64,000 bases of DNA, from the NCBI RefSeq assembly GCF_003704095.1, contig NW_020846445.1, forward strand, positions 62,001-126,000, in the 5' to 3' direction. The position numbers and the translations under genes are program-made. The notes under the pieces were generated by a model. That model did no database searches and was not told where the DNA came from. It was given only the letters and a program-made list of their open reading frames with translations. The DNA is from Pocillopora damicornis. Its lineage: Eukaryota. This document shows, one piece after another, positions 808 to 28,100 of the stretch. The stretch's first letter is position 1. Each line of letters begins with the position of its first letter.

Positions 808-1552
808 TTAAACCCGCTCTTTAAGAAGAACCAAGAGGCATAATCTCTTACTGGACAGAGTCGCTCCTAAAACCTTAGCGGAGTTGACAATAGAGAGTTC
901 CTTCCCATCAACGATGACAGGCTCGAACGCGTGCCTGTTCTTCTTAAAGTCGATGTTCATGACTTGACACTTGTCGGCATTCAAGGTCATCTTGTGCTCG
1001 CACGACCAGTTCTCAACAGCGTGAACACCACTCTGGATGTTACCCGGCTGCCTTCGCGGTACGACCTCGGCTACTTTAGTGTCATCCACGTATTTCCGGG
1101 TCTGAAAGCCTGAGACCTTGAGGTCATTTATCACTAATATAAATAACCAAGGGTCCAGCTTGGTGCCTTGGGGGACGCCAGCGGGGACTGGGCCTCATTC
1201 CGAGAAACATTCTGCAGATAGCTTGACACTTTGTTGTCGGTCCATCAGGAAGTCTGCAACCTAGTGGGCGACGCTCTTAGGGATTGGTAAATTGAAGACC
1301 TTGCACACCAGCAGGGTGTGGTCGATGAAATCGAAAGCCTTCCTATAATCGAAGAGGACAACTCTCACAGCAGCTCCAGTACTTTCAGTAGCTGTATTCC
1401 AGTTGTGCACCATTGATGTTAGGGCGTGAAGGGTAGAAGATCTCGGAGTTCCTCCAACCTGGTTAGAGTCGATAACATCCATCGCAGCAGGGCCCACATG
1501 AAGACCAACCACAAAATCTTTCGCAACTTTGGACAGCGCCGGAGTCAGGAAT
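808..1552 (-). pseudogene. Decayed non-LTR retrotransposon (CR1/L2-type) reverse transcriptase fragment
   Basis: One frame with two in-frame stops shows RT motifs LTPALSKV, FDYRKAFDFIDH, GVPQGTKLGPWLF, KYVDD and NWS...MTLNADKC, covering ORFs 1261-1512 and 808-1134. Confidence 0.9.
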
Positions 1553-1915: not shown

Positions 1916-3492
1916 GTAAAAAAAATTAATTTACGAAAGAGTCCAAACTCAGTAGAAAATATGTATTAAATTTGTTAAATGAACCACAAAATCTAGCTGA
2001 AATAAAAGCTCCGAAACTTCTTAAATTTCCAAGCAAAGGGGTAACAAATTTACGCGAACGAAAGCTCAAAAACAACTGACTAAAACTCCGCGAAAACAAA
2101 CTAAAAGTACGCCAAAAATGTCTGCATCATTTTTTCAACGTCAAGGTTAAAATTCTTTGACGTGATTTGCTAATTTGTAAAATCACAAAAATGAATGTGA
2201 ATACAAAAAGAATACAAAGAGGGAAAGAAAGAGAAAAACTGTTACTTGAAATTTAAAAACGAAAGAGATTTTCTACATGTGTCTCGCATTTCCTAAACAG
2301 ACGCGTGTACTCCAACAGCTAGAGCTTGAATGTTTTATTTGATTTTTTTCGGTTACCAAGATGTCTCTAGATACGTCATCAGAGTATCATCGAGCGATCA
2401 AAGCAATATTTTAAGGACTTCATGGTAAACTCCTTTTTTTACTATTTTTAGATCAAATCGAAGGCATTCCCACTGGTCTGTTCCGTTACAGATCTCAGAT
2501 GACTTCAGTCTGCGGTAAAAAAGCAGAAATTGGCCCATAATTATTGTAAATGAGTGTGAAATTGATAGTCTTACCATCTTTTGACGTCTTCAATAATCTA
2601 CAATGAGTGGTAAAAGTTTGAGTGTGTTTCATTATTTTCCCTCATAGTTGTTAGAGTTCGACTCCCTCACTCCCTCCCCACCCCTAATACAATGATAAAT
2701 TTTCTTAATCTTACCTCGCTCTCGAGGTACAACGATTTTGGGAAGGGGGGTGGGGAGGGTATGGAATAAGAATTTCTGAGGGTCACAAACTGTTTTGAAC
2801 CATGATTTTTGCGATGAGAAATCACATTCTTCCTTAAAACGAATCGAATTTGTACTGTTGCGTTCGACAATTTAATTTTTATTTTTCCTTTATGTTGAAA
2901 CTGATATGCGACCCTTGAATAATAAGACCTTTCCAATTGAGCAAACCTACTATCGCACCAAGACCCCTCACGGCCTGGCAGAGGAGGGATCTGTCTTAGA
3001 GCTCCTCAATTTCCTAGTCATTTGCATAATCTCAACATTTTTTTGGAGAAAAGAAGCGATGGTAAGATGATTATGAGGTTTGAGAGCTTTATTTTAATTA
3101 GCATATAAGCCCCAAAATATTACCGCTTCTTTAAAGAATCCTTTGTCACAGATGGTGTCTGCGTTCTTAATTAAGAAGATACTGAGAACGCTTTGGATAA
3201 AGCACACCGACTGATGATCGGCCTCGAGATGATATATCAAGAGACACAAGACAATTCTTTGTTTTGACAAGCCTTTTCAAAATAAAACTATTACTCGTCA
3301 TGACAATTAAAGGAATCCTTTGTTTAGCTTTCGTTAATTAAAAAGCGTTTGAAACAAATGCAGTTTGAATGATAATAGAATATATATGTGCGTGAAATTT
3401 ATGTTACTCAGTAAGCCTTTTGGAGAGTGATCTCGCGCAGACTACAGAATCAACATCTCTTTTAGCAGAAAAGTACCACTTCAAAAGCTAAC

Positions 3493-3699
3493 ATGGACTT
3501 TGAAAAGGAAATGCAAAAGTCTCTTAAAGTTATTTTCTACAACATCAAAGTCCTAGAAACCAAAAGGAAGACGTCAGTCTCATGGAATTATTCAAAGAGT
3601 GGAGTTAGTCAGCGCAAAATAAGTTTACCAGTAAAGAGAGTTACTCCTAAGTTTGAAGAACAGCATAGAGTAGCAAGAGAGCGCTGTTTTAGTGTTTAA
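3493..3699 (+). CDS. Micro-ORF A, 68 aa, unknown function; paralog of 8367-8591
   Basis: ATG in good context (AACATGG). The first 22 aa are 14/22 identical to ORF 8367 with several synonymous codon changes. TATA-like TATATAT ~110 bp upstream. Confidence 0.55.
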   Translation: MDFEKEMQKSLKVIFYNIKVLETKRKTSVSWNYSKSGVSQRKISLPVKRVTPKFEEQHRVARERCFSV

Positions 3700-6080
3700 A
3701 GATGGTTGGGCAGAGTTGACATGGATATTCGTACAAAGAGTTTATGATCCATATTCTTCAAGAAGACTGTAGCAGACAGTCCCTGTCATGGATGTGAAAA
3801 GTGACATAACATGGAAACTGTGCTGAATCTTTGTTGACTGACTTCAGAGAAATGAAGAAGCTGTGGCTGTTATAACTTTCATTTCTTGATCTGATGGGCG
3901 AGTCATAAATCAAAAGAGCTAGTTAATCGCCTGGAGAAAAAACCTACCGATTTTCAACTTTTTCAGAGAAAGAAAGCTCATTTAATCATGTTGTTTATGT
4001 TCAGATTAATTATGTAATGTTCACGCAATGATATAAAGATTCTTTTTTGCAACACAAATTGAATGAGCTCACTCATGTGCATAAGTGTTGTTCACGTGCA
4101 AAGTGCTCATCGACCGCTAGAAAAAGTGTGAAACCTCTCATTCTGAAGCTACATGTGATATGTAAAGGACTGATGTGAATAAAAAATTGAATGACATAAA
4201 CGTAACATTGTGATGCTTTCTTGAAAACAGTTTCCTTCTTTAAATACTCTCAATCAGAAAATTAACTTGAGTGATCTCGAGAATGGAGAAATTTTCATGG
4301 TTGGACGGTCGGCCTCACGATTATTAAACCGACTACACTTAGTTTATTTGACACTTTAAACTTTTGATCCCATAGTAACCTGCGCTTGAAACTGCCGCTC
4401 TACTTAAAGTTTTTTTTTATAAGGTTGTGACAGAAATTTAGTAGAATGTCAAAGGACGCACGTGAGTGTCATACCATTCCATATTACGTAACTCACGTGC
4501 AGTTCCACCCTATCCTGTGTTATATAATTTTCATAAGTTTAATNNNNNNNNNNNNNNNNNNNNNNNNNNNNNNNNNNNNNNNNNNNNNNNNNNNNNNNNN
4601 NNNNNNNNNNNNNNNNNNNNNNNNNNNNNNNNNNNNNNNNNNNNNNNNNNNNNNNNNNNNNNNNAAAAAAAGGATCTGTTTCCAATCTGCAATCATCCCA
4701 CCAGGGGAATGACGGGAAAATCTACCGAGAAAATTCCACTTTTCCTGAGACTTAAAGTTTGGCAATTTTCTAGTACATGTTCCGAATGACAGCATATTTC
4801 CAGTGTGCGACATGAGAAAAAAGGCGACAGAGAGTGTTATCAGGACATCCTAGTTAATTTAAGTATGGCTTAATGGGCTTTAGCCTCCTCTAAATAGATT
4901 TATCAATAATTGTTCGAGTAACTATGAAATTCTCATTATTATTATTAGTGAGCTAATACCAATCGTCGATTTAGAAAAACAAGTTTTGCCTACGATACTG
5001 TTTTTTTTGCGGTATACTTTCCAAGCAGGCAAATAAGTGCCAAGAAGAGCTAACAAAGTAAACACTTTAAAGCCCCCTCCTTAGGGCAGTTTACGTTCCT
5101 GGTTTCAAAGTTATGCTTTACTCGATTTAAAAATCAGGAATTTGTCTGAATTACTTGGTCTACAAATTAACAAATCATTCGCATCGTAATGGCGCAAGAA
5201 CGGATCCTGTTCCTCTAAGTGTAGAAGTGTTTTGTTACATTGTATCGAGTTGTTTGCCTTAAAATGACGCGTACATGTTGTCCATATATGACATTTCCTA
5301 CTTCAGAGTCTTCATACTAAAATCTCCAAGCTGAAGTTTCAATCCTTTACGAAAAGTGAGAACCAAAAGGCGAGACGTTTTCATGTCGCAAGATGAAGAA
5401 ACTGCCTCACGATTTGTGAGTCATTTTTTTTGCGATCAAAAATTTACCAGCAGCGTCTAAGTGATCACCAAAAAAATCAGTTTGTTTGGACAGAAAAAAA
5501 AACACGAAGGGACAGTATTATTTCGAGGTGGGACAAGGACGTCCAAAGATGGAGAAATTGAAAACGCTTGCAAATGACGATTATGGAAATTGAAGCTATG
5601 CTTTTCAAGATGGACAGACTGTGATGTTGCTCTTTCAGAATACGACAATAGGAGAAACACCAGACCCACATCATTCATATTGCAACAATTCTCCGATTGG
5701 CGTCTGTATATTGCATCAGGAATTGATGTTACATTTGACGTTTTAAAGACACAAACAAAAAGCTTTAAGTTCACAAAAACACTCAGCGCTTTTGTTAGAA
5801 TGTCATCACCTTGCTTCGTTTCAGTTTCCATGTTTGTTTCCCACTGTTTTAAAAGTGAGCATTTGATTAGTCACTTTGGGCGCGGCTATACCAGATAACA
5901 GTTTGATGCATGTTGTGAAATGTTGACGTAGGTTAATTCAAGAGGCTGCTTTCACCAGGCAGACATTTCTTTGATCAAAGCAGGAGGACATCACGATAAT
6001 TGTGAAATGAGCTGCGTCTGTTAAACTGAAGACTGAACTCACCCGCACCGCGTGAATTACGACTCGTGACAATTTTTCAG

Positions 6081-6854
6081 ATGGAAAACAAAAAAATCAG
6101 AGGCAATCGAGTGGACGATGATTTACGCGAGAGGAAGATTTCAAGAGGTTTGGTGCGACATGTTTTGACAAGGAACACTGGTGACAGGATTGCTTTGGGG
6201 AGAGTAACAAAACAACTCGACAAAGAAAGGATAGCAAAGGAATTGGATTACCAACAACAGAAACAGAAGCTTCTACTCCAGAAGTTTGAATCTCAGATGA
6301 AAGAGCGATCCGCGAAGGATTCTCAAGAAACATCAAACGAGCTCGATGGCACAGCGGGGTTGCGAAAGGCTACTGGAAAACATGTCATGTCGCGGTATAG
6401 AAGTTATTCCGAGCTGGAAATGTCGAGCTCGCAATTGCAAAGGTTGAAGTGTTCTGCAGAGATTCCTGAGGCGCTTGAGAAAAAAGCGAAAACAAACAGG
6501 GCACTCAATTATTCGCGACTGGCAGTCGAAAAGAGAGCAAACGAAACTAACCGGCCGAGGTTACGCAAAACAGGAGTGATTAAAGCTCCGGAGCGTTCAG
6601 GCCTTGTTGAGGAAGTGAGAATGAAGCGGACTAAGACGCTATCAGATATTTTACCTCCAGTTATTCTTCCACCAATATTTCAATCTGGCGCAAGTTCATT
6701 GGAAAAGAGGACTGTTCTGGAGAACCAGCGGACACAAGCAAAAGAATCTTTTTCTGAGGGTTCTGGCTCTAATCAGACACCAATGATGACTGAGATAAGA
6801 GAGTTGGAGGACCTAGAGGACTGTCGATATCTTAGAAAGAGCAATTTTCGATAA
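6081..6854 (+). CDS. Uncharacterised protein B (257 aa), N-terminal coiled coil, LPPVILPPI and C-terminal DCRYLR motif; paralog of 14376-15422
   Basis: Long intron-free ORF whose ATG at 6081 directly follows a splice acceptor (TTTTTCAG|ATG). It shares three motif blocks with ORF 14376. Confidence 0.75.
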   Translation: MENKKIRGNRVDDDLRERKISRGLVRHVLTRNTGDRIALGRVTKQLDKERIAKELDYQQQKQKLLLQKFESQMKERSAKDSQETSNELDGTAGLRKATGKHVMSRYRSYSELEMSSSQLQRLKCSAEIPEALEKKAKTNRALNYSRLAVEKRANETNRPRLRKTGVIKAPERSGLVEEVRMKRTKTLSDILPPVILPPIFQSGASSLEKRTVLENQRTQAKESFSEGSGSNQTPMMTEIRELEDLEDCRYLRKSNFR

Positions 6855-6971
6855 GCTCAGCTAAGCATGTATAACCATGTGATGCAGGAGTCAAAGTTTT
6901 ATTTTAAACTAATTCCTTTTGTGTAGACGAAGGAAGCGAAATTAGTAACTGGAGGGGAAATTAAAGAATTT

Positions 6972-7120
6972 ACGGACCATTTATTTTCTATCAACTGGGG
7001 GGGTGGTCTTAGGATTTCTTTGGGATTACAGAGCCTCAGGGGTGGATTTCATGGTGACACAACCAAAAATTCTCCAACTCACCCTCCCCCCTCCCCCAAG
7101 TAATATATCATGACCGGTCC
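6972..7120. repeat. Short degenerate MITE-like element; a related partial copy lies at 12719-12832
   Basis: Imperfect terminal inverted repeats (GGACCATTTAT...ATCATGACCGGTCC) and shared internal GACACAACCAAAA(A)T(T/C)CTCC. Confidence 0.4.
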
Positions 7121-8366
7121 CGGTCCTGGTCCCGGTTTAGTTTGAAAATTATTTCCTTGCGGTCATTAGGCCTTCACTCTCCATGTTGTGCATATGATCC
7201 GAAGCATGGAATATATATTGGAAAAATAAAGATTGGGTAAGATATAAGCATTTCAATTTAATCGCTGTTACACCCTTAAATTGACCAGTGAAATAAACTC
7301 ACTAACACTTCTCTCGGATCTTATGCATCTTCAGACTTTTAAGATGCATTAAGATGCAAGACTCAAACGGAAACACGTCAAGATCTCAAAAAGGCAACTA
7401 CTGCTTGACACATGATCACTCGCTATTTAAATTAAATGAATATTTTTTGTTCATCTGAAGGACTTCTGTACTGTTTAACGCTGCTCAAATCAAGTATTGA
7501 GTAGCTTAATGGCACCTATATTGATAGGGTCCTATAATTAGAAATAACTAGCTGTACCTAATGTGATTCTTTGCATTGAGGAGCACGAATAACACAGTTG
7601 GCATGGCCTTCAAAGTTAAAAATGCTGAGTTCTGCATTCTTAAACTAGTCAGACCCGGGTTCATCCACTTTGTTTCAGCTTTTCTGCGGACCCACGGTTC
7701 AACAGGTGTTTTGTATCTATTGTACTTCTGGGCGGGCATAATGGATTTTGTTTATAATGCTGGTTTTGTTCCTAACTAATCATTGTCAAACCACAAATAC
7801 ATTAAGCAATTACAATCAAGAAAACTACAATCAAACTGGCCGAGAAATGACGTCAGTGTGGTAATAAAAAACTGTGATTACCATAAATTGACTCGTTCAT
7901 GTGACATAGTCAAGAGCCCTTAGGGTCGAGTGGGGTTACGGGAAAAAAGCCTCAAAAGATGGTGCATTAAATAGTCCTATAGCAAAAGGGTTTTGTGCCT
8001 TAGACTGACGGTTTGGTATGGAATTTCACCTAACTTTGTCAAGAAAACAGGAGGGGGGGAGTAGTGGTTACGGTTTAGGATGTTTACCACTGCTTTTAAT
8101 CAGATTTTGGATAGAATGAATTATAAACATACAAAAAAACTATTCATTGTGTGCACTTAACCATCAATGGGTGTTTGTCAAGCCTGTGAACAATAACGAA
8201 ATGACGGCATGACTAAGGTAAAATAAAACATTTCTATTGGTTACAATCACATTGAGCAGTTATATAAAAAAGTCTAAGTAATGATGGTATTTTTAGAACC
8301 GTCTAGTCGTTGAGGAGGTTTGAATGAACCCACGTACAACCAAAGAGTCGGTAGAAATCTTAGAGG

Positions 8367-8591
8367 ATGGACTTCGAGAGAGAAATGCAGAGGGCTTTCA
8401 AAGTAATTTTTCACAACATCGAGGCCATAGAAAATAACAGAGTAAGAACACCACTCAAGTTGAATTACCCCGTAAAGGGAATCAAAAGATGGCAGAGGAA
8501 ACTGCAATCTCTGAGTTTATCGGATTTACGAGCTTCCTCCGAAGAGATCAGTTCAGCATCAGATTCTTCGTTCAAGAAACACTCTCTTTAG
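8367..8591 (+). CDS. Micro-ORF A', 74 aa, unknown function; paralog of 3493-3699
   Basis: AGGATGG start and TATATAAAAA at ~8261, ~105 bp upstream. The N-terminus MDFEREMQRAFKVIFHNIEAIE matches ORF A. Confidence 0.55.
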   Translation: MDFEREMQRAFKVIFHNIEAIENNRVRTPLKLNYPVKGIKRWQRKLQSLSLSDLRASSEEISSASDSSFKKHSL

Positions 8592-9893
8592 CCTTCTTGG
8601 CAGATGAAGCACAGTTTGACTTTTAATTTGAAATGTGCACCAACTGCACTGTTCGAAAGAAAGACACTTTCCTGATTTAAGAGTTGAAGCCATGGGCGTC
8701 ACAGTCCACCTGTGAAGACGAATACATTTGGGCCGTGTCCAAGCAGGCCCATAGCTCATGAAAAGTCACACCGAGGTGTATGAATGTCCACTTAACTTCA
8801 GCTTAATGAGCTTGAATTCAACATGATGAACTGATGAAATCATATCTTACTTATCTTGAATTTTTTTGGTATATCAAGAACGGTTGATATTAATTCAACT
8901 CCAGATTATTGACTTGGAATTCAACAGGAATTCAAGACAGCTCAATTATTGTGGTAGTCAGTTTCTAGTCACAGCTTAAAGTTCGCATTAGCGCTGTAGT
9001 TAAACTCCCCTTTCGAGAAGTTTTAGACAGCGTTATGTAGCGTTTAATTGAATTGTTTTAAGGATATCTAACGTGGCTTCAAGCGCTTCAGGGTGTGCTT
9101 TGCAAACGAATTTGCATTGCGATCGGTGAACTAAGAAGAAGGAAAATTTGTCCATCGCTAGCTGTCAAATAATTTCCTTTCATAATTTACCTCGCCTATT
9201 TATAGATTGTAAGTGTAATCAGTTTATTTTTTTTTTTCAAGTCCTATCAACCTTATATTGTTTCCCCATCATTTCTTCGTGTTTTTTATTATTAACTAAT
9301 GTAGTTTACAATCTACAAACAATGACAAATGAAATGAAAACTCTGTGGAACATTCCATCTCGTGTGGTGGCGCGTACAGTGGGAAATTGTAAAAGACATT
9401 GTAAGAAATTCGTTCAGAACCTTACAATCTGTTCGTTATGGCTTATGGAGGGAATAGATTTACTTTGTACTCCACAGGGGCGAGTGTTTGTCCATGTAGA
9501 ACAGATGTATGCTATTCAAATAAAAAATTTGTGCTTGAAATTTGCCAAAGTACAATTCTTGGATCATTGAGGTAAAATACCTGGAAACGCTACTTTTCAC
9601 CTTCGTGGACGTTTTAATCACATCTTTGAAAGTCTTCTGCAGTTGAAAAACGTGAATGTTATTCACTGATCTGGAACGGAATTACGAGAGCCACTTCAAA
9701 TCGTCTTTTCTAGAAGCATTATCTTTTTCTCGCGTGATACGGGCGTGGCAAAGCCGAGCTTTCGAGTGCGTAACTGAGAGAGGATCTGGACTATGCATCC
9801 TCCTTGTGTCCGGACATAGACGTTTCATACGTAAATCCTGTAGGCTATTTCCTTTCCTCAGACGTCTGGCACCTCAGACGGAGTCAGGTCTTT

Positions 9894-10104
9894 TTAACCA
9901 TTTGACTTTCATGAGTGATCAAAACAGAATTCCTCCTTACAACATCAAAACAAAACCAAGAGGACAGGTGGTGAGACTAGAGAAAAATATCAACTAGGGG
10001 ATTTTCAGTTAATCCGATACCAAATTCTCCAATAGACATCATGAGAACTCTATGGCAGATAGTAAGGAGAATTTATAATGAGATATTGGGTGTGAAAGGG
10101 TTAC
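9894..10104. mobile_element. Degenerate piggyBac-like MITE
   Basis: TTAACCATTTGACT...GTGAAAGGGTTAC ends. The internal sequence resembles 47317-47528. Confidence 0.6.
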
Positions 10105-13100
10105 AATGAGCAGATAATGTCTTTCCGATGGCAATATAGAAGACATTTCACAATCAAAAGAGACCGAAACTACATTTTTTAGATCAGAATAGAACAAATT
10201 TCTGAAGGTAATTCTTCGAGGGAAATTTTTTGTATCCAGATAACTGCTACCAGTAGAAAGGGCATAAAAAAATGGTCTTTGTGTGACTAGATCTAAAGGC
10301 TTAGTAGCTCTGTTCGATTTCGAGCTCTCTCGCCCGTGAAAAACGTGAGAAACGGCCCGTTCAGTTCTAAACACACGGATGAGAGCATCATTAATGAGAA
10401 CAAAAGCAAAGCGTTTAATTACTGTCTGACTCAGACAGCAGACAGACGTACATGCACATGTACGCGAACATCATTGCACAATCTCATCTCCGCTTAGATT
10501 TTTTTAGTACCTTCGTCAGGTCTCTTTTGTTCTGCTTTGTTCATCTGTGCAGTATCAACGTGCTGCTCCGATTTAGTGCCGTCGATCAGTCAAACTGTAT
10601 GACAAGCGCGAGACTGCTAGCTCCTCAGTTAGACGGTCGGTCACACTAATTCAGTTTTTCAGTATTACTCTGAAATTTGAGACCGATTCAATGAACGAAA
10701 GATTGCAATTTCGTACTAATTTCAAGTGAAATAATGCGTATCGACTTTTTATTCCAATATTCAAGGAGACGTGAAGAAAAAGTTTACATATTGATGAAAT
10801 GTAAAGTTTAATTCCCTAAGTGAAACTGCGATTTCAGATGAAATAGGAACATTGTTTTTAGTCATTCCGCCAGAGTTTAAGACCCTCAAAATCGTGTGGT
10901 GGTTAAACCTTTCCTTTGAATAAGGACTATTTTTTCGTCAATGACGTGTCTACTCGGTCATGCATTCTATATCACTTTCAAGTAGTTATTTGTTGACAAT
11001 GCAGTCAAATTTTGTACGAGCCTTCAACCATTAGCGGGTTGTTTTCATTTACCCACGCGACTAAGAGCCGATTTTCGACTCACTTTAGATAGTAGTGTTT
11101 ATTTTTTTACATCCGTTTAGATCGTACTTTGTTAATTTGTTGCGTGGAGGGTGGAGGTCTTAATTATTTCGAGTTGAAAATTTTCCAATCACTGCACATT
11201 CACAAACTGTCGTTCTTTAATTGGCATTAGTTACTGTGCCAACAGTGTGTGTAAATTCGATTGCAACCATCGTACAATCAAAAGTCCAGAATCACCTTTA
11301 CTTCCCGAAGACTAAGCAGCAGTCAAGAAAGGAAGAACTTGAGTGGAGGGATCAAGGCACTGCTTTACTGCTTCACTTGGCTTAAGGCGTATCACTGCCT
11401 TGAGGAGCTGAACTCACATCAAGCTCGGTTATGAAATTCTTAAACTGCGAGGATCGTACAGCTTTCCCCATCCAAAATCGCACACTTTTTTTAAATGAAC
11501 ACAAGAAAAGATTATTATGTTTCGGGGATGAGAAGCGGACCAAAGACATGTCTACTGACCTGAGCTTTGTTGCATATTATGCCGGTTTTTGTCGCACAAC
11601 ATAATTGCATAGCTGCTCAAAAGTCACTAGCGCCCACTACCTATAACCAATCTGTAATCTTTTGATACAACATATAGGAGCATCGACTTGGACTTGATGA
11701 TAGCTATCATCAAGTCTTACTCTGTAGTGAGAGAGTGAGTTTCCCAATTACCTTCAAAACATTCAAAATATTACAAGCTATTTTTTTAACGCCAATCAGA
11801 GAAGTGTTTTCCTTTGCTTACGCTCAAGGTTTCAGTCAGTGAGCTGGCAATTATATGAAGAGAACCAATCAGATTCTTGTATTCATACTCCGATATCAAG
11901 ATCAGTACGCACTAATGGTCTACACTAGAAAAAGCCCTTAGTAAAGAGCGGATCGGAGTCAAGACATTACAACCTGTCTCCTTTTCTATTTCGGGTCTGC
12001 TAAATCCGCCTACAAAATCCACCTAAATCTTTTAACCTCTTTCATAAATAGACCTTATAAACTACTCCAGGCATAATCCAACCTTTCTCGTTCTCTCGCG
12101 CTCAGTCACACAACCATTCATTGAGTGTTTATTGTTTGGCAGACAAGACGAGGAAAGAAAAGAAAGGAGCTATTCTATACTTTTTCAGTTGATAAAAAAT
12201 TGTGACCGATATTGAAGTCCTGCAAGTATTCTTGTAAAAGATATGTTTATACTAAATGCACTTGAACTTTTGTTAACAAAAGCTTGGGTGTAAAAGAGGC
12301 TGGAAAAGCAGGCNNNNNNNNNNNNNNNNNNNNNNNNNNNNNNNNNNNNNNNNNNNNNNNNNNNNNNNNNNNNNNNNNNNNNNNNNNNNNNNNNNNNNNN
12401 NNNNNNNNNNNNNNNNNNNNNNNNNNNNNNNNNNNNNNNNNNNNNNNNNNNNNNNNNNNNNNNNNNNNNNNNNNNNNNNNNNNNNNNNNNNNNNNNNNNN
12501 NNNNNNNNNNNNNNNNNNNNNNNNNNNNNNNNNNNNNNNNNNNNNNNNNNNNNNNNNNNNNNNNNNNNNNNNNNNNNNNNNNNNNNNNNNNNNNNNNNNN
12601 NNNNNNNNNNNNNNNNNNNNNNNNNNNNNNNNNNNNNNNNNNNNNNNNNNNNNNNNNNNNNNNNNNNNNNNNNNNNNNNNNNNNNNNNNNNNNNNNNNNN
12701 NNNNNNNNNNNNNNNNNNGGAGGGGAAGGGGGATTCTAAGAATATTACAGAGAATTAAGAAGGGATCAGGAAACTTTTAATCTGACACAACCAAAATCCT
12801 CCGATTTCCTAAGGCGATAAATGATGACCCGTCTCTCCCATAAACGTAATGTCGGACGAAAGTGGGCGACAAACAGTGTAGAAAGGATTCATATTACACT
12901 AAACGTATATAAGACTAGAAACTGGCTGCTCCCCTTGAGGAAAAGAAACCGTGAAATAGGAACAGGAATTTCCAGCGCCACATTTATAATTTGGTCTTTT
13001 GCGATGTATATATATGTGTTGTCACCCAAACAAATGACAGATAACTCTGACGGCCGTTTGTGTTACGTTTCTTTAGTGTGTCTTTGAGACAACAAATCGC

Positions 13101-14375
13101 ATGGAAAATTACCTGTTCTGGTATTTTCCACTGGCAATAACGGAACAATAGCATTTAAATAGTGTTCGGAGGCAATCATTGTATACAATTACGATTAAGA
13201 TTATCTTTTGACCAGGATTTAAAAAGCCTATTTAATCAGTTGAGCTCATCGCAGTATGTTTTTGGTTGCTCGCACAGCGTCTAAAAGAACCAAAAATAAT
13301 TTTGAGTCAGAGTGGAAACTCTCGGTCGTCACTCCAATGGAGCGCTCTGCAGTTTTCTGTCCAGATATCCGATTGTAACACATTTTGTGTTGCCGATTTT
13401 AACTATTTGCTGGCAAAATTTCAATTAGGAAAACAGCGGACTTCAAAGTTCGCTATTTAACATTAACTGAAAATAACTCCTCAAGATCTAGTTATCGTGA
13501 CTTTGTGATGTCGGCGCTATTTAATCAGCTTAGACCAAGAGCACGGAGTGTGCAGTCAACAATCATGCCCCCTCTTACCGCCAAACGATTCTAAACACGT
13601 GATTCTGAAGTCGTAAACACAGAGGTGAGAAATTGTTATTTCTGCTGGCTGCAGGGATTGGCCAAGGGTCTTATAACACCACACGGCAGCTTTCGCTAAA
13701 AGAGCTAATTTGTCATGCCCAAAACCTATTAACCTCTTTTTTTTATCCAAATTTGAAGATTTACTGCACGGACAATGGAGACCAATTGACTCTACTTTGA
13801 CTCAGGCTATGCATGCATAACTTAGATCCACGAACTTTTGAAAAATTAGTGGGATTAGTGGTTAAAACAGTGTGTAACTTGCCAATACAACACCCAGACA
13901 CTCAACACTCTTGTCATCACCTCTGCAAAATCTCCTCCATGGCTTTCTTAAAAATCGATTTTCCTCCAGCTGAAATATACTGATGATTAGCTCTTTTGCA
14001 TAAATTAAAAACAGATGGAAACAGTCAGAGCATACTTGTCTCTTAGACAAAACGAACAACCACGACTCTAACTGGTGTTTGTTTACAAGCAGTCAATTCA
14101 GCGCAAAACAGGTCACTTCAGGTCAATCGCTTTCGCAATAAGGTGAGTAAAAACCTAAAATATGCTTGGAATCGTTCGTTGGCGCATGCTTGGTAACAAG
14201 TTAAGTAAATAATTGCTATTTCGGAACAAATACAACAAGGATTAATTTCACGGGGTCATTCAGAGCTAAGACGCCCCCGTAAACATACAGGGAATAGAAT
14301 GTCGCACACATGTCTACCAAGACAGAAGAATAAAATCGGAATCCGTGCAAGTTCTGATAAAAATTCAAGGGTAAA

Positions 14376-15422
14376 ATGGCTAAGAATATGACGAGCAGAG
14401 AGAAACTCACGTACGAAGGATATACTTTGCCAAAACCTACCATCAAAGAGCTACTGGCCCGTAACGCACGGAAGGATTCGGAGTTAAAAACCCTCCACAA
14501 AAGACTCGACAAGGAGAAAGAGGAACTCGAGAGCGATTTTTCCAAGACACGCTCTCAGTTTCTTTCCCGAGTTCACAATTTGTTGTTGGAGGGACAAACA
14601 CACGATCTTGGGTTTAATCATGAGAGCAATTCTGACGAAGAACAACAGAGTACTTTCGAAAGTGGTGCTAAAAACGATAATGGCATTAACGATTTAACTC
14701 CATCATGGGAAGCGAATTTGAAAAGTCTGTCCAGCTCTCAGCTCGATGAGGACATAAACAGGGCTGGATGTAATCGAAACTCACGCCACATTCAACCATG
14801 GGCACAAAAAGTCAAACACTACAACCATTCTTTGGCCACAAAAGCTGAGTCAGGTTCATCAAAACTCTCGCGTTCTAGACGTAAAGTAAGTTGGGGAGGT
14901 AGGGCAAACGTTATGCCTGAAGATTGGGACGCGAGAAGCGTTCTCAGCAAGTCGAACTCCGAAGGAAATCTTCCCTCCGCTCAAGTCACATGTCCGATAA
15001 GTGACACCTTACGCTCTAGAATTCGGAGACACTCCGTTGTCGGTCGATCGCGATTTGATACCTTTAATCCCAGAAGCAACAGCCTCATGAAGGAAGATTT
15101 AAAAAACCAGAAGTCGTCGAACACTCCACGCCAGGTAAAACAACGAAGGCACACGGTTTGTGCTAGAGGAATTTTTGAGCCGAAACTGACTTCTACCGAA
15201 GAGGAAAAATGTAAAGCAAAAAAACCTTTGTCTGAACTTCTTCCTCCAATTACACTACCTCCGATTTATCTGCAAGAATCAAAAGGAAAAGAAACAGGCA
15301 AAAAGAAGAGCTTCGTAAAGACACACGTACGACCGAAAGCTGCGGATTCCACACAGCTCACAGAAGATTTAGACTATTGCCGCTACTTACGATTGAATAG
15401 AAAAGACGGCGATTACAGTTAG
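14376..15422 (+). CDS. Uncharacterised protein B' (348 aa), coiled coil, disordered basic/Ser-rich middle, LPPITLPPI and CRYLR motif
   Basis: 1047-nt ORF with AAAATGG start. Paralogous motif blocks shared with 6081-6854. Confidence 0.8.
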   Translation: MAKNMTSREKLTYEGYTLPKPTIKELLARNARKDSELKTLHKRLDKEKEELESDFSKTRSQFLSRVHNLLLEGQTHDLGFNHESNSDEEQQSTFESGAKNDNGINDLTPSWEANLKSLSSSQLDEDINRAGCNRNSRHIQPWAQKVKHYNHSLATKAESGSSKLSRSRRKVSWGGRANVMPEDWDARSVLSKSNSEGNLPSAQVTCPISDTLRSRIRRHSVVGRSRFDTFNPRSNSLMKEDLKNQKSSNTPRQVKQRRHTVCARGIFEPKLTSTEEEKCKAKKPLSELLPPITLPPIYLQESKGKETGKKKSFVKTHVRPKAADSTQLTEDLDYCRYLRLNRKDGDYS

Positions 15423-19700: not shown

Positions 19701-22700
19701 AGGGTATTACTAGATTATTTGATTTTAAAAACTGAGTTGATTATGAATATTGGCCATCGTAAAGAGTTATTTAAGTCCTTGAGCTTCAGAAGCTCTTTAC
19801 GGTGGTCAATTTACATTATTAACTCATTAAAAGACACAAATTGTCTTACAATTACGTAGGTTGATTACCTCTAACTGGTCCACCAGCTCCATTTCCAGTC
19901 CCATTAGTGTGTCCCACAGTTTTCTTATTTCTTCAACGATTTCCTTCATCAAGGTTTCCATATGACTCTGGTCAGTTAGGCTAGTATAGTCCAAAAATAC
20001 CTGAAATGAAACATAAGGATTGCACTCATTGCAAAAATCGGGAATTACTAGTTCGGCTCAGTACAACAGGCATAAAATAAATGATGTACTCTTTTGTGCA
20101 AGTCGCGTGTAGTACAGAAATATAATAAAGCAAAGATACAACTTGTAGATGCAGTCTTACTTTCAGGGACAGTCGTTTTCGATATACTGTTTAAGTTCAC
20201 TCAAGATTAAAAGAGTGGTCAGTTTAGCAGTTCAAGGTGGAAGACATGTCGCAGAAAAACGAAATGCAGATTGACCAGAAATCTGCAATCATTATTAGAT
20301 TATCCTTCCGCTCAGGAGAGAGTCAAACTCATATGAACACGTAACACATTTATGAGGTTCTTATTGGTGGGGGTGGGGAATTGGGGGGTTCAATTTCAGG
20401 CCGTTTGACAGCTAACACCATTGAACTCCTGTGTAAGTAAATTCTAGCAGGAAGAGCCATTTAGCTCGTGCGTTGACTGCACGTGTATATCTGCTTGCCA
20501 TTTACAAAGAAATGCTCCATACCTTTTTCTTGTACTCAATGTAGCTATGAATGTGCTTGACACCTGTGTTGTTGTTTTCTTGCGTTGCTTCTTCCAAACA
20601 AGAAAAGAATGATGCAATTTCTGCTTCTCTCTTTTCATGCTCCTTCAAGCCAAACTCGAATATTTCCTGGCAAATTGCTGTAAACTTCTCATTGTATCTT
20701 GCATAAGTAAAGGTGCGTAATCTTAATTAAGAATACATGGGTGTACAATTCTGAAATACAAATCCATTTACTTAATAAACAATGTTGCTACATACTATAA
20801 TGTATGCTGTTTGTAAAGGATACCCATTGAGGATTTCTTCCATTCCAGGAAGAGCCCCAAGTTTACCAGCCTCAGGATCATCAGCATACATGCTTTCAAA
20901 GAGCCATGGACCATTCAGGTCCTCCACAAAGGCCATCTAAAAATTTGAAAGGAGAAGTGTGTGCTAAGAATAGAAACAAAGGGCATACAAACACAAGAAA
21001 AAATACCAGTCGTTCAATGAGATCACCCAAAGGAGGGTACAGTCCTGCAAAAGACTGCAACAACTAAACTTAGGTCAATGTCAGTCTGATTTTTCAATAA
21101 ACTAAAACAGAAGTCATAATCAGAGCCACATGGAAAGGTGTTTGTAGTTGAATTTCAATAAGTCTAGTAGAAAAATAATTGTGTGAAGTTTATCATTCCT
21201 GAAGGAGGTATGGGCAGGTGATCAATTTGAAAATGTCATCCAGGCTAAAGCAACCTGGATGAAATACTAGGGCAGAGGTAGGGCAATTTTCAACTGAGTC
21301 TGTAAAGCAATCTGAGATTGCCCTGGTTTTGCCTAACTTTCCTCTGTAATTGACCCATTAAAAACTTGCCCCACTGATTCAACCAATCAAATACAAAACT
21401 AAATCTAATTGGATCCAGGATACATGCATTTCCCCTTGCTTTAGACAAAAAGCCTTTCTATGGGCCCAAGTGGTCCATGGGGCCGATGCTTAACTCCAGT
21501 TTTCTTAGCATGAAGAGGCTAGGAGTATTGCTACTCCCCCCCTGGATGGGATGCTAGTCCATTGCAGGGTTACCCCCAGCACATTTGCTGGTACCCATTT
21601 GTACACCTGGGTGAAGAGAAGCTCGGTGAGAGTAAAGTGTCTTGCCTAAAAACACAACACAATGACCAAATTACTTTTTAGACAAAAAAAGAGGGGAAAA
21701 AACTCTGACCGCTTTTTGCAGTATTTTCCTTTGTTCTGATTGGTCAGTATCAGAGATTAGTTTGGTTTTGGTTCTATCACAACACTCAAATGAAAAGAGC
21801 TCTAATCATTAACTCCAAAGATCTGAGTACCAATCCTTCCTCCTTCCTGCTATACATTACTTTTACTTATTGATCAAAAGGAAGCAAACATCGTACAAGT
21901 GAAGTTGCCACCAAATTCCACCCATTGGAGCTCTCCTTTTGGTATACATGTACCTTGTGCAACTGTCTCTCCTTTTGGTTTTCTTCAACTTCATCCTGTT
22001 TTCTCTTGGCTATGGTCTCATTTTGGACCATTTCCTCTATAGAATATTTGTATTTTTCTGTTGCAGCTTCTCGGGCTGATTCATCGATCAGACGAAAGTC
22101 CAGGTAGACAAGTTCTGATAGATGTGCAATTACATATTCTTTGTAATTAACTTCCTCAGAAAATGGGTTTCCACTGAGGTTTAAAGTTCTCAAGGACTTG
22201 AATCGTCTGAGATAAACAACCTAAATTACCAAAAATGATTTTAATGAATACTGTTGTTGGACACAATAAGAATCAGGAAACTTTTATACATTTTCCCTTA
22301 ATTTAACGTATAAATCTCGATGAAATTGTCTTTAAGGTATTACTGGCAATTTAAATTTGCACCATTATCATTTTTATTTAATGAGATCAGTTTAAAGTTT
22401 GCATCCCATGGATGAATTGGATTGTTATATCTCTCAGTAAGAACATGCCCTGTGACAGGTCAATTCAGTGGTCCGTATTTCACTGTGCTGTCACCTAAAT
22501 TCAAAAGTTTGTTTGAACTGAAATGTTTCTCCAAATTTTGAACCCAGAGATATAATAATAAATATCCTTGGCTACGGACCTTGTTTCCTTGGTCCTTACT
22601 CTAAGTTTAAGATTCAAACCAGGTTCTATCTGCTTATATTTCAGGCCTGTGTCCTTTTTGCTTGGACCACAATTAGACCAAGCCAAAAAAGAAATACAGT

Positions 22701-25140: not shown

Positions 25141-28100
25141 ATGATGGAATATGAATATGAAATAGACCCCAGGTATGTGAGAAGTAGTTATAACCCTTAT
25201 TAAATCCTTTGATATCGAAGTTCGTTTCATTCAAGGGTTTCTTTTCTTGATTTCTTTTTTCTGCCAGGGGACTACAAGGAAAACCAGGATCGGTGGTGTT
25301 GAAAAAAGACAAGCAAAATTTAATTGGAATAAGCATCGGTGGAGGAGCTCCTCTTTGTCCTTGCCTGTATGTCGTTCAAGTATTTGATAACACTCCAGCT
25401 TCTCGAGAGGGTGTGCTTCAGGCAGGCGATGAAATTGTCGGTGTAAATGGAAAATCTCTCAGAGGAAAAACAAAAGTCGACGTGGCCCGAGCTATTCAAG
25501 CCGTTAAAGTAAGTTCTCTTTTTGGTCCTCTTTTCTGTACACATGCGAAAGAAATTCATTTCATAGCAAACTGTTTGGTAAGTAGAATGGAGTATAAGCC
25601 AAATTTAGCTCTGGGTGGAAAGCAGAGCCTTTCATGACTGAATGATTGGATTTATTATTGTTTAAAAGTTTCATCAATTATTGATTAATTAATGAAACTT
25701 TCATTGGATGTCAATATGATTAGCTTTTCCATTCCTCAAGACCTGATTTTGAACTTGAATTAGTCCTTCCACTCTCTCAAGAGACCAATCAGTAATTTCT
25801 GCTTAAGATATCAATTTAATGTCAAGCAGAAATGTTATAAGAATTATGAAATCATAAACCGGGGAAAATTGCTCGTCTCAGCATCAAATTTCCTGAGCTA
25901 AAATTGCAAGGAATGGATGATAGACAGTAAGGATAAGTAATATGCAGATCTTAGAAGTTATGTGATCCATATGTGGGATTACTTAATTTTCATGCTTCGT
26001 GTTATTGTTGTTGTTGTTTTTTTAATCAACAAATCACAGTAATTAATTACTACTCTCCTGTTTGCTTATCAAATTAGGAGGAAGTTACTATAAACTATGT
26101 CAAACTACATGCCGAACCAACAGAAGGAAAAACTCTGGATATCAGTGAGTGAAAAGAGTGAAAATATGATATGTAAAATAATTAATGATACAATTATCTA
26201 TTGATATGGTATGTTTTATTTAATTATATATTTTTTATTTTAATGTTTACTTGTTTATGAACCACCTTCATTAAAAAAGCCCTTGGAAGGCCATTATTTA
26301 AGGGATTTGTTGAAGACCTGATAGAGTGCTGGATTCTCCTTTGAAATTTTCTCACATTTCTTTGAAAAATACAAGGAGAAATTGGTGTTGCTGAAAAAGT
26401 CAGTTAAGGCTTAATTACATGTTCTCCTTCAGTTTTACAAGGTAAGAGGCAGATCTGCCCATGTTCATGAACTTGTTTTTGTTTTTTATCACATAGTATT
26501 AAAGAAAATGAAACATCGTATAGTGGAGCACATGAGTTCATCAACTGCAGATGCTTTGGGTCTCAGCAGAGCAATTCTGTGTAATGGTAAGTGGTAGAAG
26601 ACAGAAAGTACTGTAACCTTTATGTGTCAATCTCTGTCTGTCTTTTTTTTTTTTACCTTTCATTGTGTCTGTGACTGTCAGCCCATTTCTTCATATTCCA
26701 TTAATTTTGTCAGTTCAATACAGATGAGAGGTTTATAATAGAGTTGCTATTTGTTTTGCTAAAAAGGTTGAAGAAACTGTTATTTTTACATTTAAGAGGG
26801 GTTATATGCCAGTTGGCCAGTTACCCCCTCTTTGAATGAAAATTGGTATAGTTGTTTTACATGCAGATACATATTCCATTTTGTTTTAAGTTATTTAACA
26901 TGTCACTCTAAAACATTTAATATTTTGTTTCCCTTCAGATGGACTGGTTAAAAAAATGGAGGAACTGGAGCAAAATTCCAATATCTACAAGGGTACCTTT
27001 TTTTGCTGTTGTAATTTTGGACATAACTTTGTTTATTCCAAGGTTCTCAAAATTTATAGGAAAAAAAACACTAATCCATTTATCTCTTTTTCAGGTCTTC
27101 TTGATCATGCCAGACAGTTTCTACAAAGCTTTTATAACTTAGCTCAAACACATAAAGGTATGAAAAGATACTAGCATTTTTTAATACATGGAGTTAATTT
27201 ATTTGCAGAATTAGCCAGTTGGAAAATACAGACTTGAAGATTGTCATTCTTGGGTCTTGTGAAAAAAATATCCAATTTATAACTTGAAATTCAATTGATC
27301 TTATTTTGCAGAACTTGGAGAAATATTTGCTTCCATTGGTGTGAGAGAATTGCAGCCAAATGCAAGTGAGGCATTTGCAATTTTTAGCGAGGCTCACAGG
27401 TAATAAAACAAGGCAGCAGTAAACAGGTATACTAGAAAAAGATAAGCTAGAAAAAAGATAGATCAAATGAAAAATTCCTGGGTTTTATTTGAAATGAAGA
27501 TTACACTGATCAGGATCATGGCTGTTTTTGGAGCAGTTATCCTTGCAGTACTTAAATTTGAAATTATCATCTGGTATTTGATTAAATCTTATTTATTTAT
27601 TGTTTCTTTCAGAAACTTTGAGAAGCTAGGAATGGATTATCTAAAGAAAGTCAAACCCATGTTGAGTGATCTGAACACTTATCTTTCTAAGGTACATTTA
27701 ATTGATACAAATCGGTACAGATTTTGATAAATTAGCTTTAGGTATTTTATTGTTATGCCAGAAATATAAACACCATCAACTAATAGTAACACCTTTCCTT
27801 TTACAGGCTATCCCAGATACCAAATTGACTATCAAAAAATATGCTGATGCTAAATTTGAATATTTGGTAAGTTAAGTGCAGCTTAAAATTTAATGCAATA
27901 ATGTACAGTAGTCCACTTCAATAACCCACAATGCTCACTTTACCCCAAAAATCCAAGATATCCTGCTTGATAATAATTTGTTACACTTTTTTTTTTGCAG
28001 TCATATTGCCTGAAAGTAAAGGAGATGGATGATGAAGAATATGCTTATGCTGTAAGTTTGGCTCCTGTCTCCTGTTCCTTTTCTTGTTTTAGAATCAGTT

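What the first reader, a model, noticed from the sequence alone, without database searches (positions are those of the whole stretch)
3493..15422. Duplicated two-gene module (micro-ORF A + CRYLR protein B) in A-B-A'-B' order, both families unrecognised
Seen: four same-strand, single-coding-exon ORFs alternate as A (3493), B (6081), A' (8367), B' (14376). A matches A' and B matches B' only in short protein motifs, and no obvious DNA similarity was seen in the flanks. This points to an old duplication with selection at the protein level. Inference: retaining both partners in order suggests a functionally coupled pair, e.g. a phospho-regulated scaffold and a small partner peptide. The cluster sits next to a run of cilia/cytoskeleton genes. 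I recognise neither family.
Basis: partly seen in the sequence, partly recalled or inferred. Interest (0 to 1): 0.75.

Follow-up and report, generated by a model that had tools for sequence, protein, structure and literature searches.

The report
Four separate coral genes, two uncharacterised families
Two tiny-protein genes alternate with two larger genes of an unnamed animal protein family in an old, conserved coral gene cluster, but each gene makes its own messenger RNA and nothing yet shows that they work as pairs.

Summary
A (3493-3699) and A' (8367-8591) are related (BLASTP E 3e-13). B (6081-6854) and B' (14376-15422) are related through their C-terminal LPPxxLPPI and CRYLR motifs (E 7e-9). 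Flanking DNA is not alike. Neither assembly gap touches an ORF.

Contigs from four poly-A/cDNA RNA runs lie colinear and unspliced as separate blocks, each ending just past a poly-A signal: A 3378-4245, B 5771-7876, A' 8304 to about 9533. B' relatives all start at their own Met.

Both families are real and unnamed.
- A/A' are short members of a coral small-protein family. This genome holds at least 10 loci on four contigs.
- B/B' belong to a family with 106 representative clusters. Named members come from Nematostella, a crinoid and a hemichordate, all "uncharacterized".
- B and B' end a five-gene tandem array.

Each of the four genes has its own orthologues. In another coral all four share one 3.13-Mb contig, so the cluster is old. 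Elsewhere the two families are unlinked. The tree does not place B beside B', and a B+B' clade is not rejected (AU p 0.10).

Functional coupling and PP1/PKA-type regulation remain inference. The scan noted this stretch before (s1-766482).

The parts
3378..4245 (+). Transcribed block of gene A: unspliced mRNA of about 0.85 kb
   Evidence: Colinear RNA contigs 3378-4245 (X5), 3475-4170 (X2) and 3422-3950 (X1), plus X12 pieces 3477-4150; no joints. Strand is inferred from the ORF and the poly-A signal.
3493..3699 (+). A: 68-aa micro-protein CDS (MDFEKEMQKSLKVIFYNIKVLE...; basophilic sites KRKT, RKIS, KRVT)
   Evidence: A profile of six long family members built without A hits it at E 2.1e-6 among 3208 ORFs. 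Close relatives P0226 (68 aa) and P0229 (70 aa) keep the whole ORF.
4178..4183 (+). Poly-A signal hexamer (AATAAA) of the A mRNA
   Evidence: RNA contigs end at 4150-4245.
4544..4664 (.). Assembly gap between genes A and B (not filled)
   Evidence: The scan's program note. X5 contigs stop at 4543 and resume at 4665 with loose letters.
5771..7876 (+). Transcribed block of gene B: unspliced mRNA of about 2 kb
   Evidence: Contigs 5771-7876 (X1, 2123 nt), 5978-7218 plus 7189-7837 (X2), 5913-7003 (X5) and 7061-7965 (X12); they run straight across 6080/6081.
6081..6854 (+). B: 257-aa CDS of the CRYLR-tail family (RKIS site, LSDILPPVILPPIF, EDLEDCRYLRK)
   Evidence: Orthologues are P0037/P0255 (54% identity, 257 aa) and P0048 (41%). 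Clade support is 99 SH-aLRT.
7863..7868 (+). Poly-A signal hexamer of the B mRNA
   Evidence: The X1 contig ends at 7876.
8304..9540 (+). Transcribed block of gene A': unspliced mRNA of about 1.24 kb (the end is inferred)
   Evidence: Contigs start at 8304-8318 in all four runs and run past 9349. The X5 record reaches about 9533 and there is a poly-A signal at 9519. The contigs cross the GTAAGA at 8442 unspliced.
8367..8591 (+). A': 74-aa micro-protein CDS (MDFEREMQRAFKVIFHNIEAIE...LSLSDLRASSEE...)
   Evidence: P0022 (69 aa, 90%) and P0023 (73 aa, 78%) keep the full ORF. The long-family profile scores E 3.2e-8. The only indel listed inside the ORF is an in-frame GCG at 8540.
12314..12718 (.). 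Assembly gap between A' and B' (not filled, not covered by reads here)
   Evidence: The scan's program note; outside the stretch laid.
14376..15422 (+). B': 348-aa CDS of the CRYLR-tail family (EGYTLPK..., RRKVSWGGR, RRHSV, RRHTV, LSELLPPITLPPIY, EDLDYCRYLR)
   Evidence: 21 relatives of 327-412 aa; the ten aligned all begin at the equivalent Met. They include Oculina patagonica LOC144633843 (347 aa, 59%).

Best explanation
The stretch holds four independent, same-strand genes, each with a single-exon coding region, rather than two coupled units on shared mRNAs. A and A' are paralogous micro-protein genes of 68 and 74 aa. Each has its own short polyadenylated mRNA. They are the short branch of a coral family of small basic proteins that share an N-terminal amphipathic motif ([FY]E[KR]EM[QE]K.L..IF.NI..LE). 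B and B' are two anciently separated members of a larger family of about 200-450-aa basic, low-hydrophobicity proteins. That family has an N-terminal helix-like block (L..RNA.....LK...LDKEK), a LS[DE]ILPPxxLPPI[YH] motif and a [DE]L..CRYLR tail. It is present in cnidarians, a crinoid and a hemichordate. In this genome B and B' close a five-gene tandem array (C1, C2, C3, B, B'). The A-B-A'-B' interleaving is old: orthologues of all four sit on one contig in another coral. It most likely arose by local duplication inside this cluster and has been carried along by conserved synteny. Whether one A-B block doubled, or A and B doubled separately, is open. Shown here: the ORFs, their relatedness, the separate transcripts, family breadth, linkage at contig scale. 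Inferred: the products are largely disordered regulatory or scaffold proteins controlled by basophilic kinases, given conserved RRxS/T-type sites in all four. B' and the long A-family members would dock protein phosphatase 1 through RVxF-type motifs with an embedded serine (RRK[VI]SW; RRKV[SR]FAD). The A/A' helix would be a protein-binding element.
For: Relatedness. Separate transcripts: four RNA runs from three studies give no joints. They give discrete colinear contig blocks at 3378-4245, 5771-7876 and 8304 to about 9533, with zero depth at 4750-5149 in all four runs. AATAAA/ATTAAA hexamers lie at 4178, 7863 and 9519, just before the block ends. B' is complete on its own: 21 relatives of 327-412 aa, and the ten aligned start at the same Met. 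A/A' are coding. Of 21 short-type rows (68-92 aa, 18 of them 68-82) from many assemblies, 20 keep the MDFE[KR]EMQ start and P0022 begins at the inner Met. All 21 keep the VIF/AIF core, a conserved R/K-rich ...LS site and similar stops. The one indel inside the A' ORF is in frame and reproduces the extra Ala of P0022. Family breadth of B: 106 representatives at E<=1e-3 and 43 at <=1e-10. Named members are Nematostella vectensis LOC116616611 and A7SDZ4, Anneissia japonica LOC117124344 and Glandiceps talaboti LOC144446773. A CRYLR-type motif is in 96 of 125 family proteins and an LPPxxLPP-like motif in 63 of 125. Tandem array. Old linkage: the same longest-contig length, 3,133,938, is given for the B' orthologue P0016, the B orthologue P0255, the A-type P0236 and P0246 and the A'-type P0241. 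Length 422,689 is shared by P0010 and P0233, and 1,254,309 by P0021, P0250 and P0251. P0238 (A-type) and P0242 (A'-type) share one 5,709-nt contig. Composition: 61-69% polar or charged residues and net charge +5 to +18. The Atlas model of the A' orthologue P0023 has pLDDT 0.48.
Against: The RNA data are assembled contigs, which cannot show strand, true ends or rare isoforms. Low-depth pieces at 4410-4543 and 5317-5820 (depth 1-9) leave room for minor read-through from A into B. One X1 contig carries 17 unexplained letters before 5771. No A-like ORF lies within the 180-2,606 nt available upstream of eight B' orthologue loci; that is uninformative because the spacer here is 5.8 kb. The function is not tested at all. 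The K of KVIF is missing in 2 of 21 short rows and in every other A-like paralogue of this genome (LLIY, TLIF, AVIY, TIIY, NSIF, GMIF). B itself has no RVxF-like motif. Translation of A/A' is not shown.
Confidence: 0.75

Rival explanations
1. One reading: A and B are a functionally coupled pair (a small partner peptide plus a phospho-regulated scaffold) that was duplicated as one block. Selection keeps each A next to its B.
For: The alternating same-strand order occurs only here, among at least four A-like and three B-like loci in a 234-Mb genome. All four orthologues share a contig in another coral, and A-type plus B' share contigs in two more. A B+B' clade is not rejected (AU p 0.101). A and B are both present in the same RNA runs.
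Against: B-family genes C1-C3, B'' and the C1291 member have no A-like neighbour, and A-like arrays on C3966, C4004 and C3580 have no B-like gene. The B family occurs in Nematostella, a crinoid and a hemichordate, where no A relative was found, though the A search works by shared words and may miss them. In the free tree B groups with a Nematostella clade (SH-aLRT 83) and B' with another clade. Conserved synteny alone can explain retained linkage.
Confidence: 0.2
2. A (and A') is an upstream ORF or first exon on the same mRNA as B (and B'). In that case the 'pair' is one gene or a bicistronic message.
For: An AG sits directly before B's ATG and a GTAAGA follows codon 25 of A' in phase 0. Weak RNA contigs lie between A and B.
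Against: There were no joints in four RNA runs. Contigs cross 6080/6081 and 8441/8442 colinearly. The A block ends at 4150-4245 after an AATAAA at 4178, and the A' block ends near 9533 after a signal at 9519. A' orthologues keep the whole 73-aa ORF beyond the putative donor. The ten B' relatives aligned (of 21 found), among them the Oculina model from NCBI, start at the Met of B'. The longest contig carrying the A' orthologue P0023 is 1,242 nt, which matches a 1.24-kb monocistronic mRNA.
Confidence: 0.03
3. A/A' act as inhibitor-1/DARPP-32-like PP1 inhibitors: an N-terminal KVIF docks PP1, and a downstream basophilic site switches inhibition on.
For: KVIF fits the loose RVxF pattern and is present in 19 of 21 short-type rows. 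RKIS, RRLS or similar sites follow about 25-35 residues later.
Against: Pfam gave no family for A or A' at E<=1, so no DARPP-32 match. The basic residue is absent in SAIF and SVIF rows and in all other A-like paralogues. The motif sits inside a heptad-like hydrophobic pattern (F3, M7, L11, I14, I18, L21; my reading of the sequence), whereas RVxF motifs bind in an extended form (recalled). The phospho-acceptor is Ser at variable spacing.
Confidence: 0.1
4. A and A' are non-coding RNAs whose ORFs are chance features.
For: They are only 68-74 codons long, have no Pfam match, and no translation evidence was obtained here.
Against: E 3e-13 between the two copies. 21 short-type relatives keep the start, core motif and length. 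There is profile-level kinship to longer paralogues. The indel in the ORF is in frame, while four of the five indels listed in the 3' part of the A' transcript are not multiples of three (three 1-nt deletions or insertions at 9191, 9227, 9281; 3 nt at 9194).
Confidence: 0.02

Closest known systems
Uncharacterized proteins LOC144633843 (Oculina patagonica), LOC116616611 and A7SDZ4 (Nematostella vectensis), LOC117124344 (Anneissia japonica), LOC144446773 (Glandiceps talaboti)
   Same: They belong to the same protein family as B and B' by profile search and carry the same N-terminal block, LPPxxLPP-type motif and CRYLR tail.
   Different: None has a described function, domain or paper: a search for five locus names returned 0 papers. 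B and B' are separate branches of the family.
PP1 targeting subunits with a serine inside the RVxF motif (PPP1R3A/GM 'RRVSFAD', KNL1 'RVSF'; recalled, not from a call)
   Same: B' has RRKVSWGGR, and an ISW/VSW core is kept in 11 of 11 B'-type rows. Long A-family members have RRKVSFAD or RRKVRFAD near the C-terminus.
   Different: There is no CBM21 or other domain and no Pfam hit. B, A and A' lack this motif. PP1 binding is untested.
Inhibitor-1 / DARPP-32 small disordered PP1 inhibitors (recalled)
   Same: Small, basic and probably disordered, with an N-terminal [KR][VI]xF-like tetrapeptide and a downstream basophilic phospho-site in A/A'.
   Different: No sequence kinship. The tetrapeptide lies in a helix-like motif and its basic residue is not conserved in paralogues.
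Conserved micro-protein (smORF) genes of animals in general
   Same: An ORF under 100 codons on its own short mRNA, conserved in length and sequence across species.
   Different: No named smORF family matches. Here the short form is a truncated branch of a 130-155-aa family.

Membership tests
CRYLR-tail family (unnamed; defined here by alignment A4) | C-terminal [DE]L..[CI]RY[LIV]R within 40 residues of the end | tested here: met
   B has EDLEDCRYLRK and B' has EDLDYCRYLRL. The motif is in 96 of 125 family proteins.
CRYLR-tail family (unnamed; defined here by alignment A4) | LS[DE][IL]LPPxxLPP[IL][YHF] motif | tested here: met
   Present in B, B' and B''. It is degenerate (LPDI[HN]) in C1-C3. 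An LPPxxLPP-like motif is in 63 of 125 proteins.
CRYLR-tail family (unnamed; defined here by alignment A4) | Significant profile match over the whole length | tested here: met
   In the genome search with A4, B' scores 6.9e-106 and B 6.7e-52, but both are rows of the profile. As an independent check, a C1-C3-only profile gives B E 0.001 and B' 0.56 among 3208 ORFs, which is weak.
Short MDFE[KR]EMQ micro-protein family (unnamed; alignment A6) | Start MDFE[KR]EMQ followed by [KS][VA]IF.NI..[LI][ED], total length about 68-92 aa | tested here: met
   A and A' both have it; 21 short-type rows. A profile of long paralogues built without them scores A' 3.2e-8 and A 2.1e-6.
Micro-protein-coding gene (smORF) | Own transcript | tested here: met
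   Separate colinear RNA contig blocks with poly-A signals. The evidence is contigs only, not raw reads.
Micro-protein-coding gene (smORF) | Evidence of translation (ribosome footprints, peptides) | not testable with these tools
   No such data were reachable.
RVxF-type PP1-interacting proteins | Conserved [KR]-x(0,1)-[VI]-{P}-[FW] in a disordered stretch | tested here: inconclusive
   B': RKVSW, with the ISW/VSW core in 11 of 11 B'-type rows. A/A': KVIF in 19 of 21 short rows, but not in paralogues and inside a helix-like motif. B: none.
RVxF-type PP1-interacting proteins | Binding to the PP1 catalytic subunit | not testable with these tools
   This is a bench assay.
Inhibitor-1/DARPP-32 (Pfam DARPP-32 family; name recalled) | Match to the family profile | tested here: not met
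   The Pfam scan of A and A' returned 0 families at E<=1.
Upstream ORF / bicistronic unit with the downstream gene | Both ORFs on one mature mRNA | tested here: not met
   No joints. The A block ends at or before 4245 and the B block starts at or after 5771. The A' block ends about 9533, 4.8 kb before B'. Rare read-through is not excluded.

The most novel reading that the evidence does not exclude
The short MDFE-type micro-proteins are dedicated partners of the neighbouring CRYLR-tail proteins. The A helix would bind the N-terminal helix of its B, and basophilic-kinase and PP1 sites on both would make a two-component phospho-switch. That would explain why the A-B-A'-B' order has been kept across scleractinian corals.
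Probability: 0.12. Interest if true: 0.6.

Novelty: new member of a known kind. Interest (0 to 1): 0.35.

Why it matters
It turns an apparent two-gene module into a clear gene map: four transcription units, a five-gene tandem array and two unnamed families. The B family reaches from cnidarians to ambulacrarian deuterostomes without any annotation. The A family is a clean case of conserved micro-protein genes, each with its own mRNA, in reef-building corals; such genes are easily missed by annotation. If the conserved interleaving reflects a real partnership, it would offer a tractable small-protein/scaffold pair, with obvious phospho-sites, to test in Nematostella or coral cell systems. As it stands this is an ordinary conserved gene cluster of unknown function.

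Tried and rejected
The idea that A is the first coding exon of B was my first guess and I rejected it. The ten B' relatives aligned start at their own Met, A' orthologues keep the ORF past the GTAAGA, and RNA contigs are unspliced.

Searches that gave nothing:
- Pfam scans of ten proteins gave only sub-threshold noise.
- Profile searches of PDB sequences with A4 and A3 found only tau at E 0.16 and Lmo0919 at E 1.2, which I treat as chance.
- The ESM Atlas gave no feature hit for B' or for P0023. The structure hits for P0023 rest on a pLDDT 0.48 model and mean nothing.
- Eight metagenome loci carrying B' orthologues hold no A-like ORF, but they have at most 2.6 kb upstream.
- The weak L017 ORF hit from the long-A profile (E 0.2) is low-complexity noise.

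The 17 loose letters before 5771 in one X1 contig remain unexplained. A 9-letter part of them does not occur in the window and there is no clean acceptor at that point.

The tree and the AU test could not decide between a block duplication and separate duplications. The tested group was named after I had seen the tree.

Papers:
- 'CRYLR' matched 26 papers; I saw only the listing of 10, and none of them looked relevant from title and abstract start (suture material and the like).
- The micropeptide/coral search listed nothing on corals among the 10 shown of 679.
- Five locus names matched 0 papers.
- I read no paper and opened no supplements, which were closed.

Not examined further: the C3143 hit (E 0.54), beyond a motif scan.

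Full report
WHAT IS THERE. The four ORFs exist as described.
- A is 3493-3699 (68 aa), B is 6081-6854 (257 aa), A' is 8367-8591 (74 aa) and B' is 14376-15422 (348 aa). All are on the + strand.
- A and A' match at E 3e-13, with 22 of 46 residues identical and the best match in the first 25 residues.
- B and B' match at E 7e-9 over the C-terminal LPPxxLPPI...CRYLR part, and weakly (E 0.011) at the N-terminus.
- At DNA level only the first 67 nt of A/A' are alike (76%). The flanks are not alike.
- No Pfam family reaches its cut-off for any of them.

THE GAPS. The gaps at 4544-4664 and 12314-12718 lie between genes. No ORF or frame depends on them.
- RNA contigs of one run enter the first gap from both sides with letters that are not in the window.
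- Real sequence is therefore hidden there, and the A-B distance is only an estimate.
- I did not use those letters.

ONE mRNA OR FOUR? I first guessed that A/A' were first exons of B/B'. That is wrong.
- 21 relatives of B' (327-412 aa) were found. The ten aligned, among them Oculina patagonica LOC144633843 named by NCBI, begin at the Met of B'.
- Two relatives of A' keep the whole 69-73-aa ORF at 90% and 78% identity, well past the GTAAGA that follows codon 25.
- I laid the contigs of four RNA runs (poly-A, oligo-dT or cDNA libraries, from three studies) on 3350-9349. There was no joint at all.
- Three separate colinear blocks appear.
  - A: 3378-4245.
  - B: 5771-7876, crossing the AG at 6079-6080 without splicing.
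  - A': from 8304-8318 in all four runs to beyond 9349, about 9533 in the longest record.
- Depth is zero in all four runs at 4750-5149.
- Poly-A signal hexamers lie at 4178, 7863 and 9519, just before the block ends.
- Limits: these are assembled contigs, which cannot give strand, exact ends or rare forms.
  - Weak pieces at 4410-4543 and 5317-5820 leave minor read-through possible.
  - One contig has 17 unexplained letters before 5771.

THE A FAMILY. Searching the window's own genome gave further A-like frames.
- Reading them showed at least five tandem genes on contig C3966 at about 87-100 kb and one on C3580.
- These are 130-155 aa long. They share the core motif EM..F..I[FY]HNI.RL and carry a C-terminal RRKV[SR]FAD-type motif.
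- A profile built from six of these, without A or A', scores A' at 3.2e-8 and A at 2.1e-6 among 3208 ORFs. The next non-training ORF scores 0.2; the top hit, L025 at 5.3e-64, is the C3580 training member itself.
- A profile of the short forms finds two more A-like ORFs on C4004, 2.4 kb apart.
- The word/profile search returned 70 proteins among 1528 candidates.
  - 21 of them are short-type rows of 68-92 aa (18 of them 68-82).
  - 20 start MDFE[KR]EMQ and P0022 begins at the inner Met.
  - They continue K[AS]LKVIFQNIQALE, then a basic ...LS site, and often a PRKxLS-like end.
  - KVIF is present in 19 of these 21 rows. For that count I dropped P0254 and P0232, which are pieces of long-type members.
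- Two types recur: FEKEMQ, as in A, and FEREMQ, as in A'.
  - Both types sit on one 5,709-nt NCBI contig (P0238, P0242).
  - Both types sit on one 3,133,938-nt contig (P0236/P0246 and P0241).
  - The A/A' split therefore predates the divergence of these corals.
- The only indel listed inside the A' ORF in the RNA contigs is an in-frame GCG. It reproduces the extra Ala of P0022.

THE B FAMILY.
- Directly upstream of the window on the same strand lie three more single-ORF genes with the same head and CRYLR tail: C1 (205 aa), C2 and C3.
- B and B' therefore end a five-gene tandem array.
- A sixth member, B'' (281 aa, with LPPASLPP and CRYIR), is on C2792 and a seventh is on C1291.
- A profile of 16 family rows found 106 representatives at E<=1e-3, 43 at <=1e-10 and 7 at <=1e-30 among 1.84 billion.
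- I looked up 20 of them. Five carried names, all "uncharacterized" or "predicted" proteins. They come from Nematostella vectensis (two), the crinoid Anneissia japonica and the hemichordate Glandiceps talaboti, plus one MetaClust row with an empty name.
- B has its own orthologues: P0037/P0255 at 54% and P0048 at 41%. So do B', B'' and the C genes.
- I built a quick tree of 83 rows, leaving out 33 of 110 library proteins because they lacked a tail motif or fell outside 180-480 aa.
  - B sits in a 3-row clade (support 99), next to a clade that holds Nematostella LOC116616611 (support 83).
  - B' sits in a 10-row clade (support 100) with a different sister group.
  - B and B' are joined only through an unresolved node.
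- Holding B and B' clades together costs 14.3 log-likelihood units, with AU p 0.101. This is not rejected, and the group was named after I had seen the tree.
- Pairwise bit scores agree with an old three-way split: B-B' 41.6, B'-B'' 39.3, B-B'' 31.2.

LINKAGE. Inside this genome the two families are adjacent only here.
- C1-C3, B'' and the C1291 member have no A-like ORF nearby.
- The C3966, C4004 and C3580 A-like loci have no CRYLR gene.
  - 3,133,938 is shared by the B' orthologue P0016, the B orthologue P0255, A-type P0236/P0246 and A'-type P0241.
  - 422,689 is shared by P0010 (B') and P0233 (A-type).
  - 1,254,309 is shared by P0021 (B') and P0250/P0251.
- Identical seven-digit lengths almost certainly mean the same contig, but order and spacing there are unknown.
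- Three of the six B' orthologues on contigs over 100 kb show such a match. The other three show none, which may only reflect which cluster member was listed.

HOW IT MOST LIKELY WORKS. Shown here: four transcription units, two unnamed families, and an old linkage that is conserved at contig scale. The rest is inferred.
- All four proteins are basic (net charge +5 to +18), 61-69% polar or charged, and carry [RK][RK]x[ST] sites.
- The Atlas model of an A' orthologue is low-confidence, pLDDT 0.48. This fits disorder.
- B' carries RRKVSWGGR, with the ISW/VSW core in 11 of 11 B'-type rows. The long A-family members carry RRKV[SR]FAD.
- Both resemble PP1-docking RVxF motifs with a phosphorylatable serine, as in GM and KNL1. 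That comparison is recalled and comes from no call.
It is less convincing.
  - Its lysine is missing in 2 of 21 short rows.
  - It is missing in every other A-like paralogue here.
  - It lies in a heptad-like hydrophobic pattern.
- I therefore favour disordered, kinase-controlled adaptor proteins. On this reading the A/A' helix is a binding element and PP1 docking is limited to B' and the long A forms. My confidence in that functional part is about 0.2.
- The gene-structure part is well supported.

COMPARISON AND NOVELTY.
- Nothing known matches by sequence: Pfam, PDB and the Atlas.
- No paper names the family members. The listing for 'CRYLR' and the micropeptide/coral search showed nothing relevant among the rows listed.
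- Predicted proteins of both families already sit in public databases, unnamed. The arrangement is a tandem cluster of a usual kind.
- I file it as a new member of a known kind, with moderate interest.

ORGANISM.
- Coral metatranscriptomes hold the stretch.
- A member of a 90%-identity cluster of a long A-family protein is from Pocillopora meandrina.
- The assembly size of 234.35 Mb in 4393 contigs matches my recollection of the Pocillopora damicornis assembly. That identification is recall, not a tool result.

The Atlas could not read A' itself. Supplementary files of papers were closed and not needed.

Noticed in passing
L011:4144-4761, L013:2004-2708, L013:5024-5776 (G000:C3080:54144-61776, just upstream of the window): Three more same-strand single-ORF genes of the CRYLR-tail family (205, 234/223 and 250/243 aa). 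Together with B and B' they form a five-gene tandem array.
   Followed up: yes
G000:C3966:87061-100300 (L003, L005, L022-L024): Tandem array of at least five 130-155-aa A-like genes with EM..F..I[FY]HNI.RL and a C-terminal RRKV[SR]FAD-type motif. There are no CRYLR genes between them. One copy abuts an N gap that has the same peptide (MRDHKSSEKMSNGQSRR) on both sides, which is probably an assembly artefact.
   Followed up: partly
G000:C4004:50073-52623 (L028): Two further A-like ORFs 2.4 kb apart (MNYEKEMEKCLNSIF..., DYEKEMEKALGMIF...). They lack the lysine of KVIF.
   Followed up: partly
window 808-1512, minus strand: ORFs that look like reverse-transcriptase fragments (a YVDD-like stretch) lie between the upstream array and gene A. 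They are probably a decayed retroelement. This is my reading of the translation; I did not scan it.
   Followed up: no
window 5771: One RNA contig (run X1) carries 17 letters before 5771 that are not in the window. They could be a far 5' exon or an assembly chimera.
   Followed up: partly
window 6968 and 8540: Run X5's contigs carry a 28-nt insertion in B's 3' untranslated part and an in-frame GCG in A', which is the extra Ala seen in P0022. X5 therefore holds a different allele or a close relative.
   Followed up: partly
window 21867-23785 (minus strand) and 25293-25637 (plus strand): Leucine-rich-repeat exons and a PDZ-like exon lie downstream of B'. I did not search them.
   Followed up: no
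L012:140-2080, minus strand (G000:C2792): Exons resembling a leucine aminopeptidase lie upstream of B''. I recognised them by eye only.
   Followed up: no
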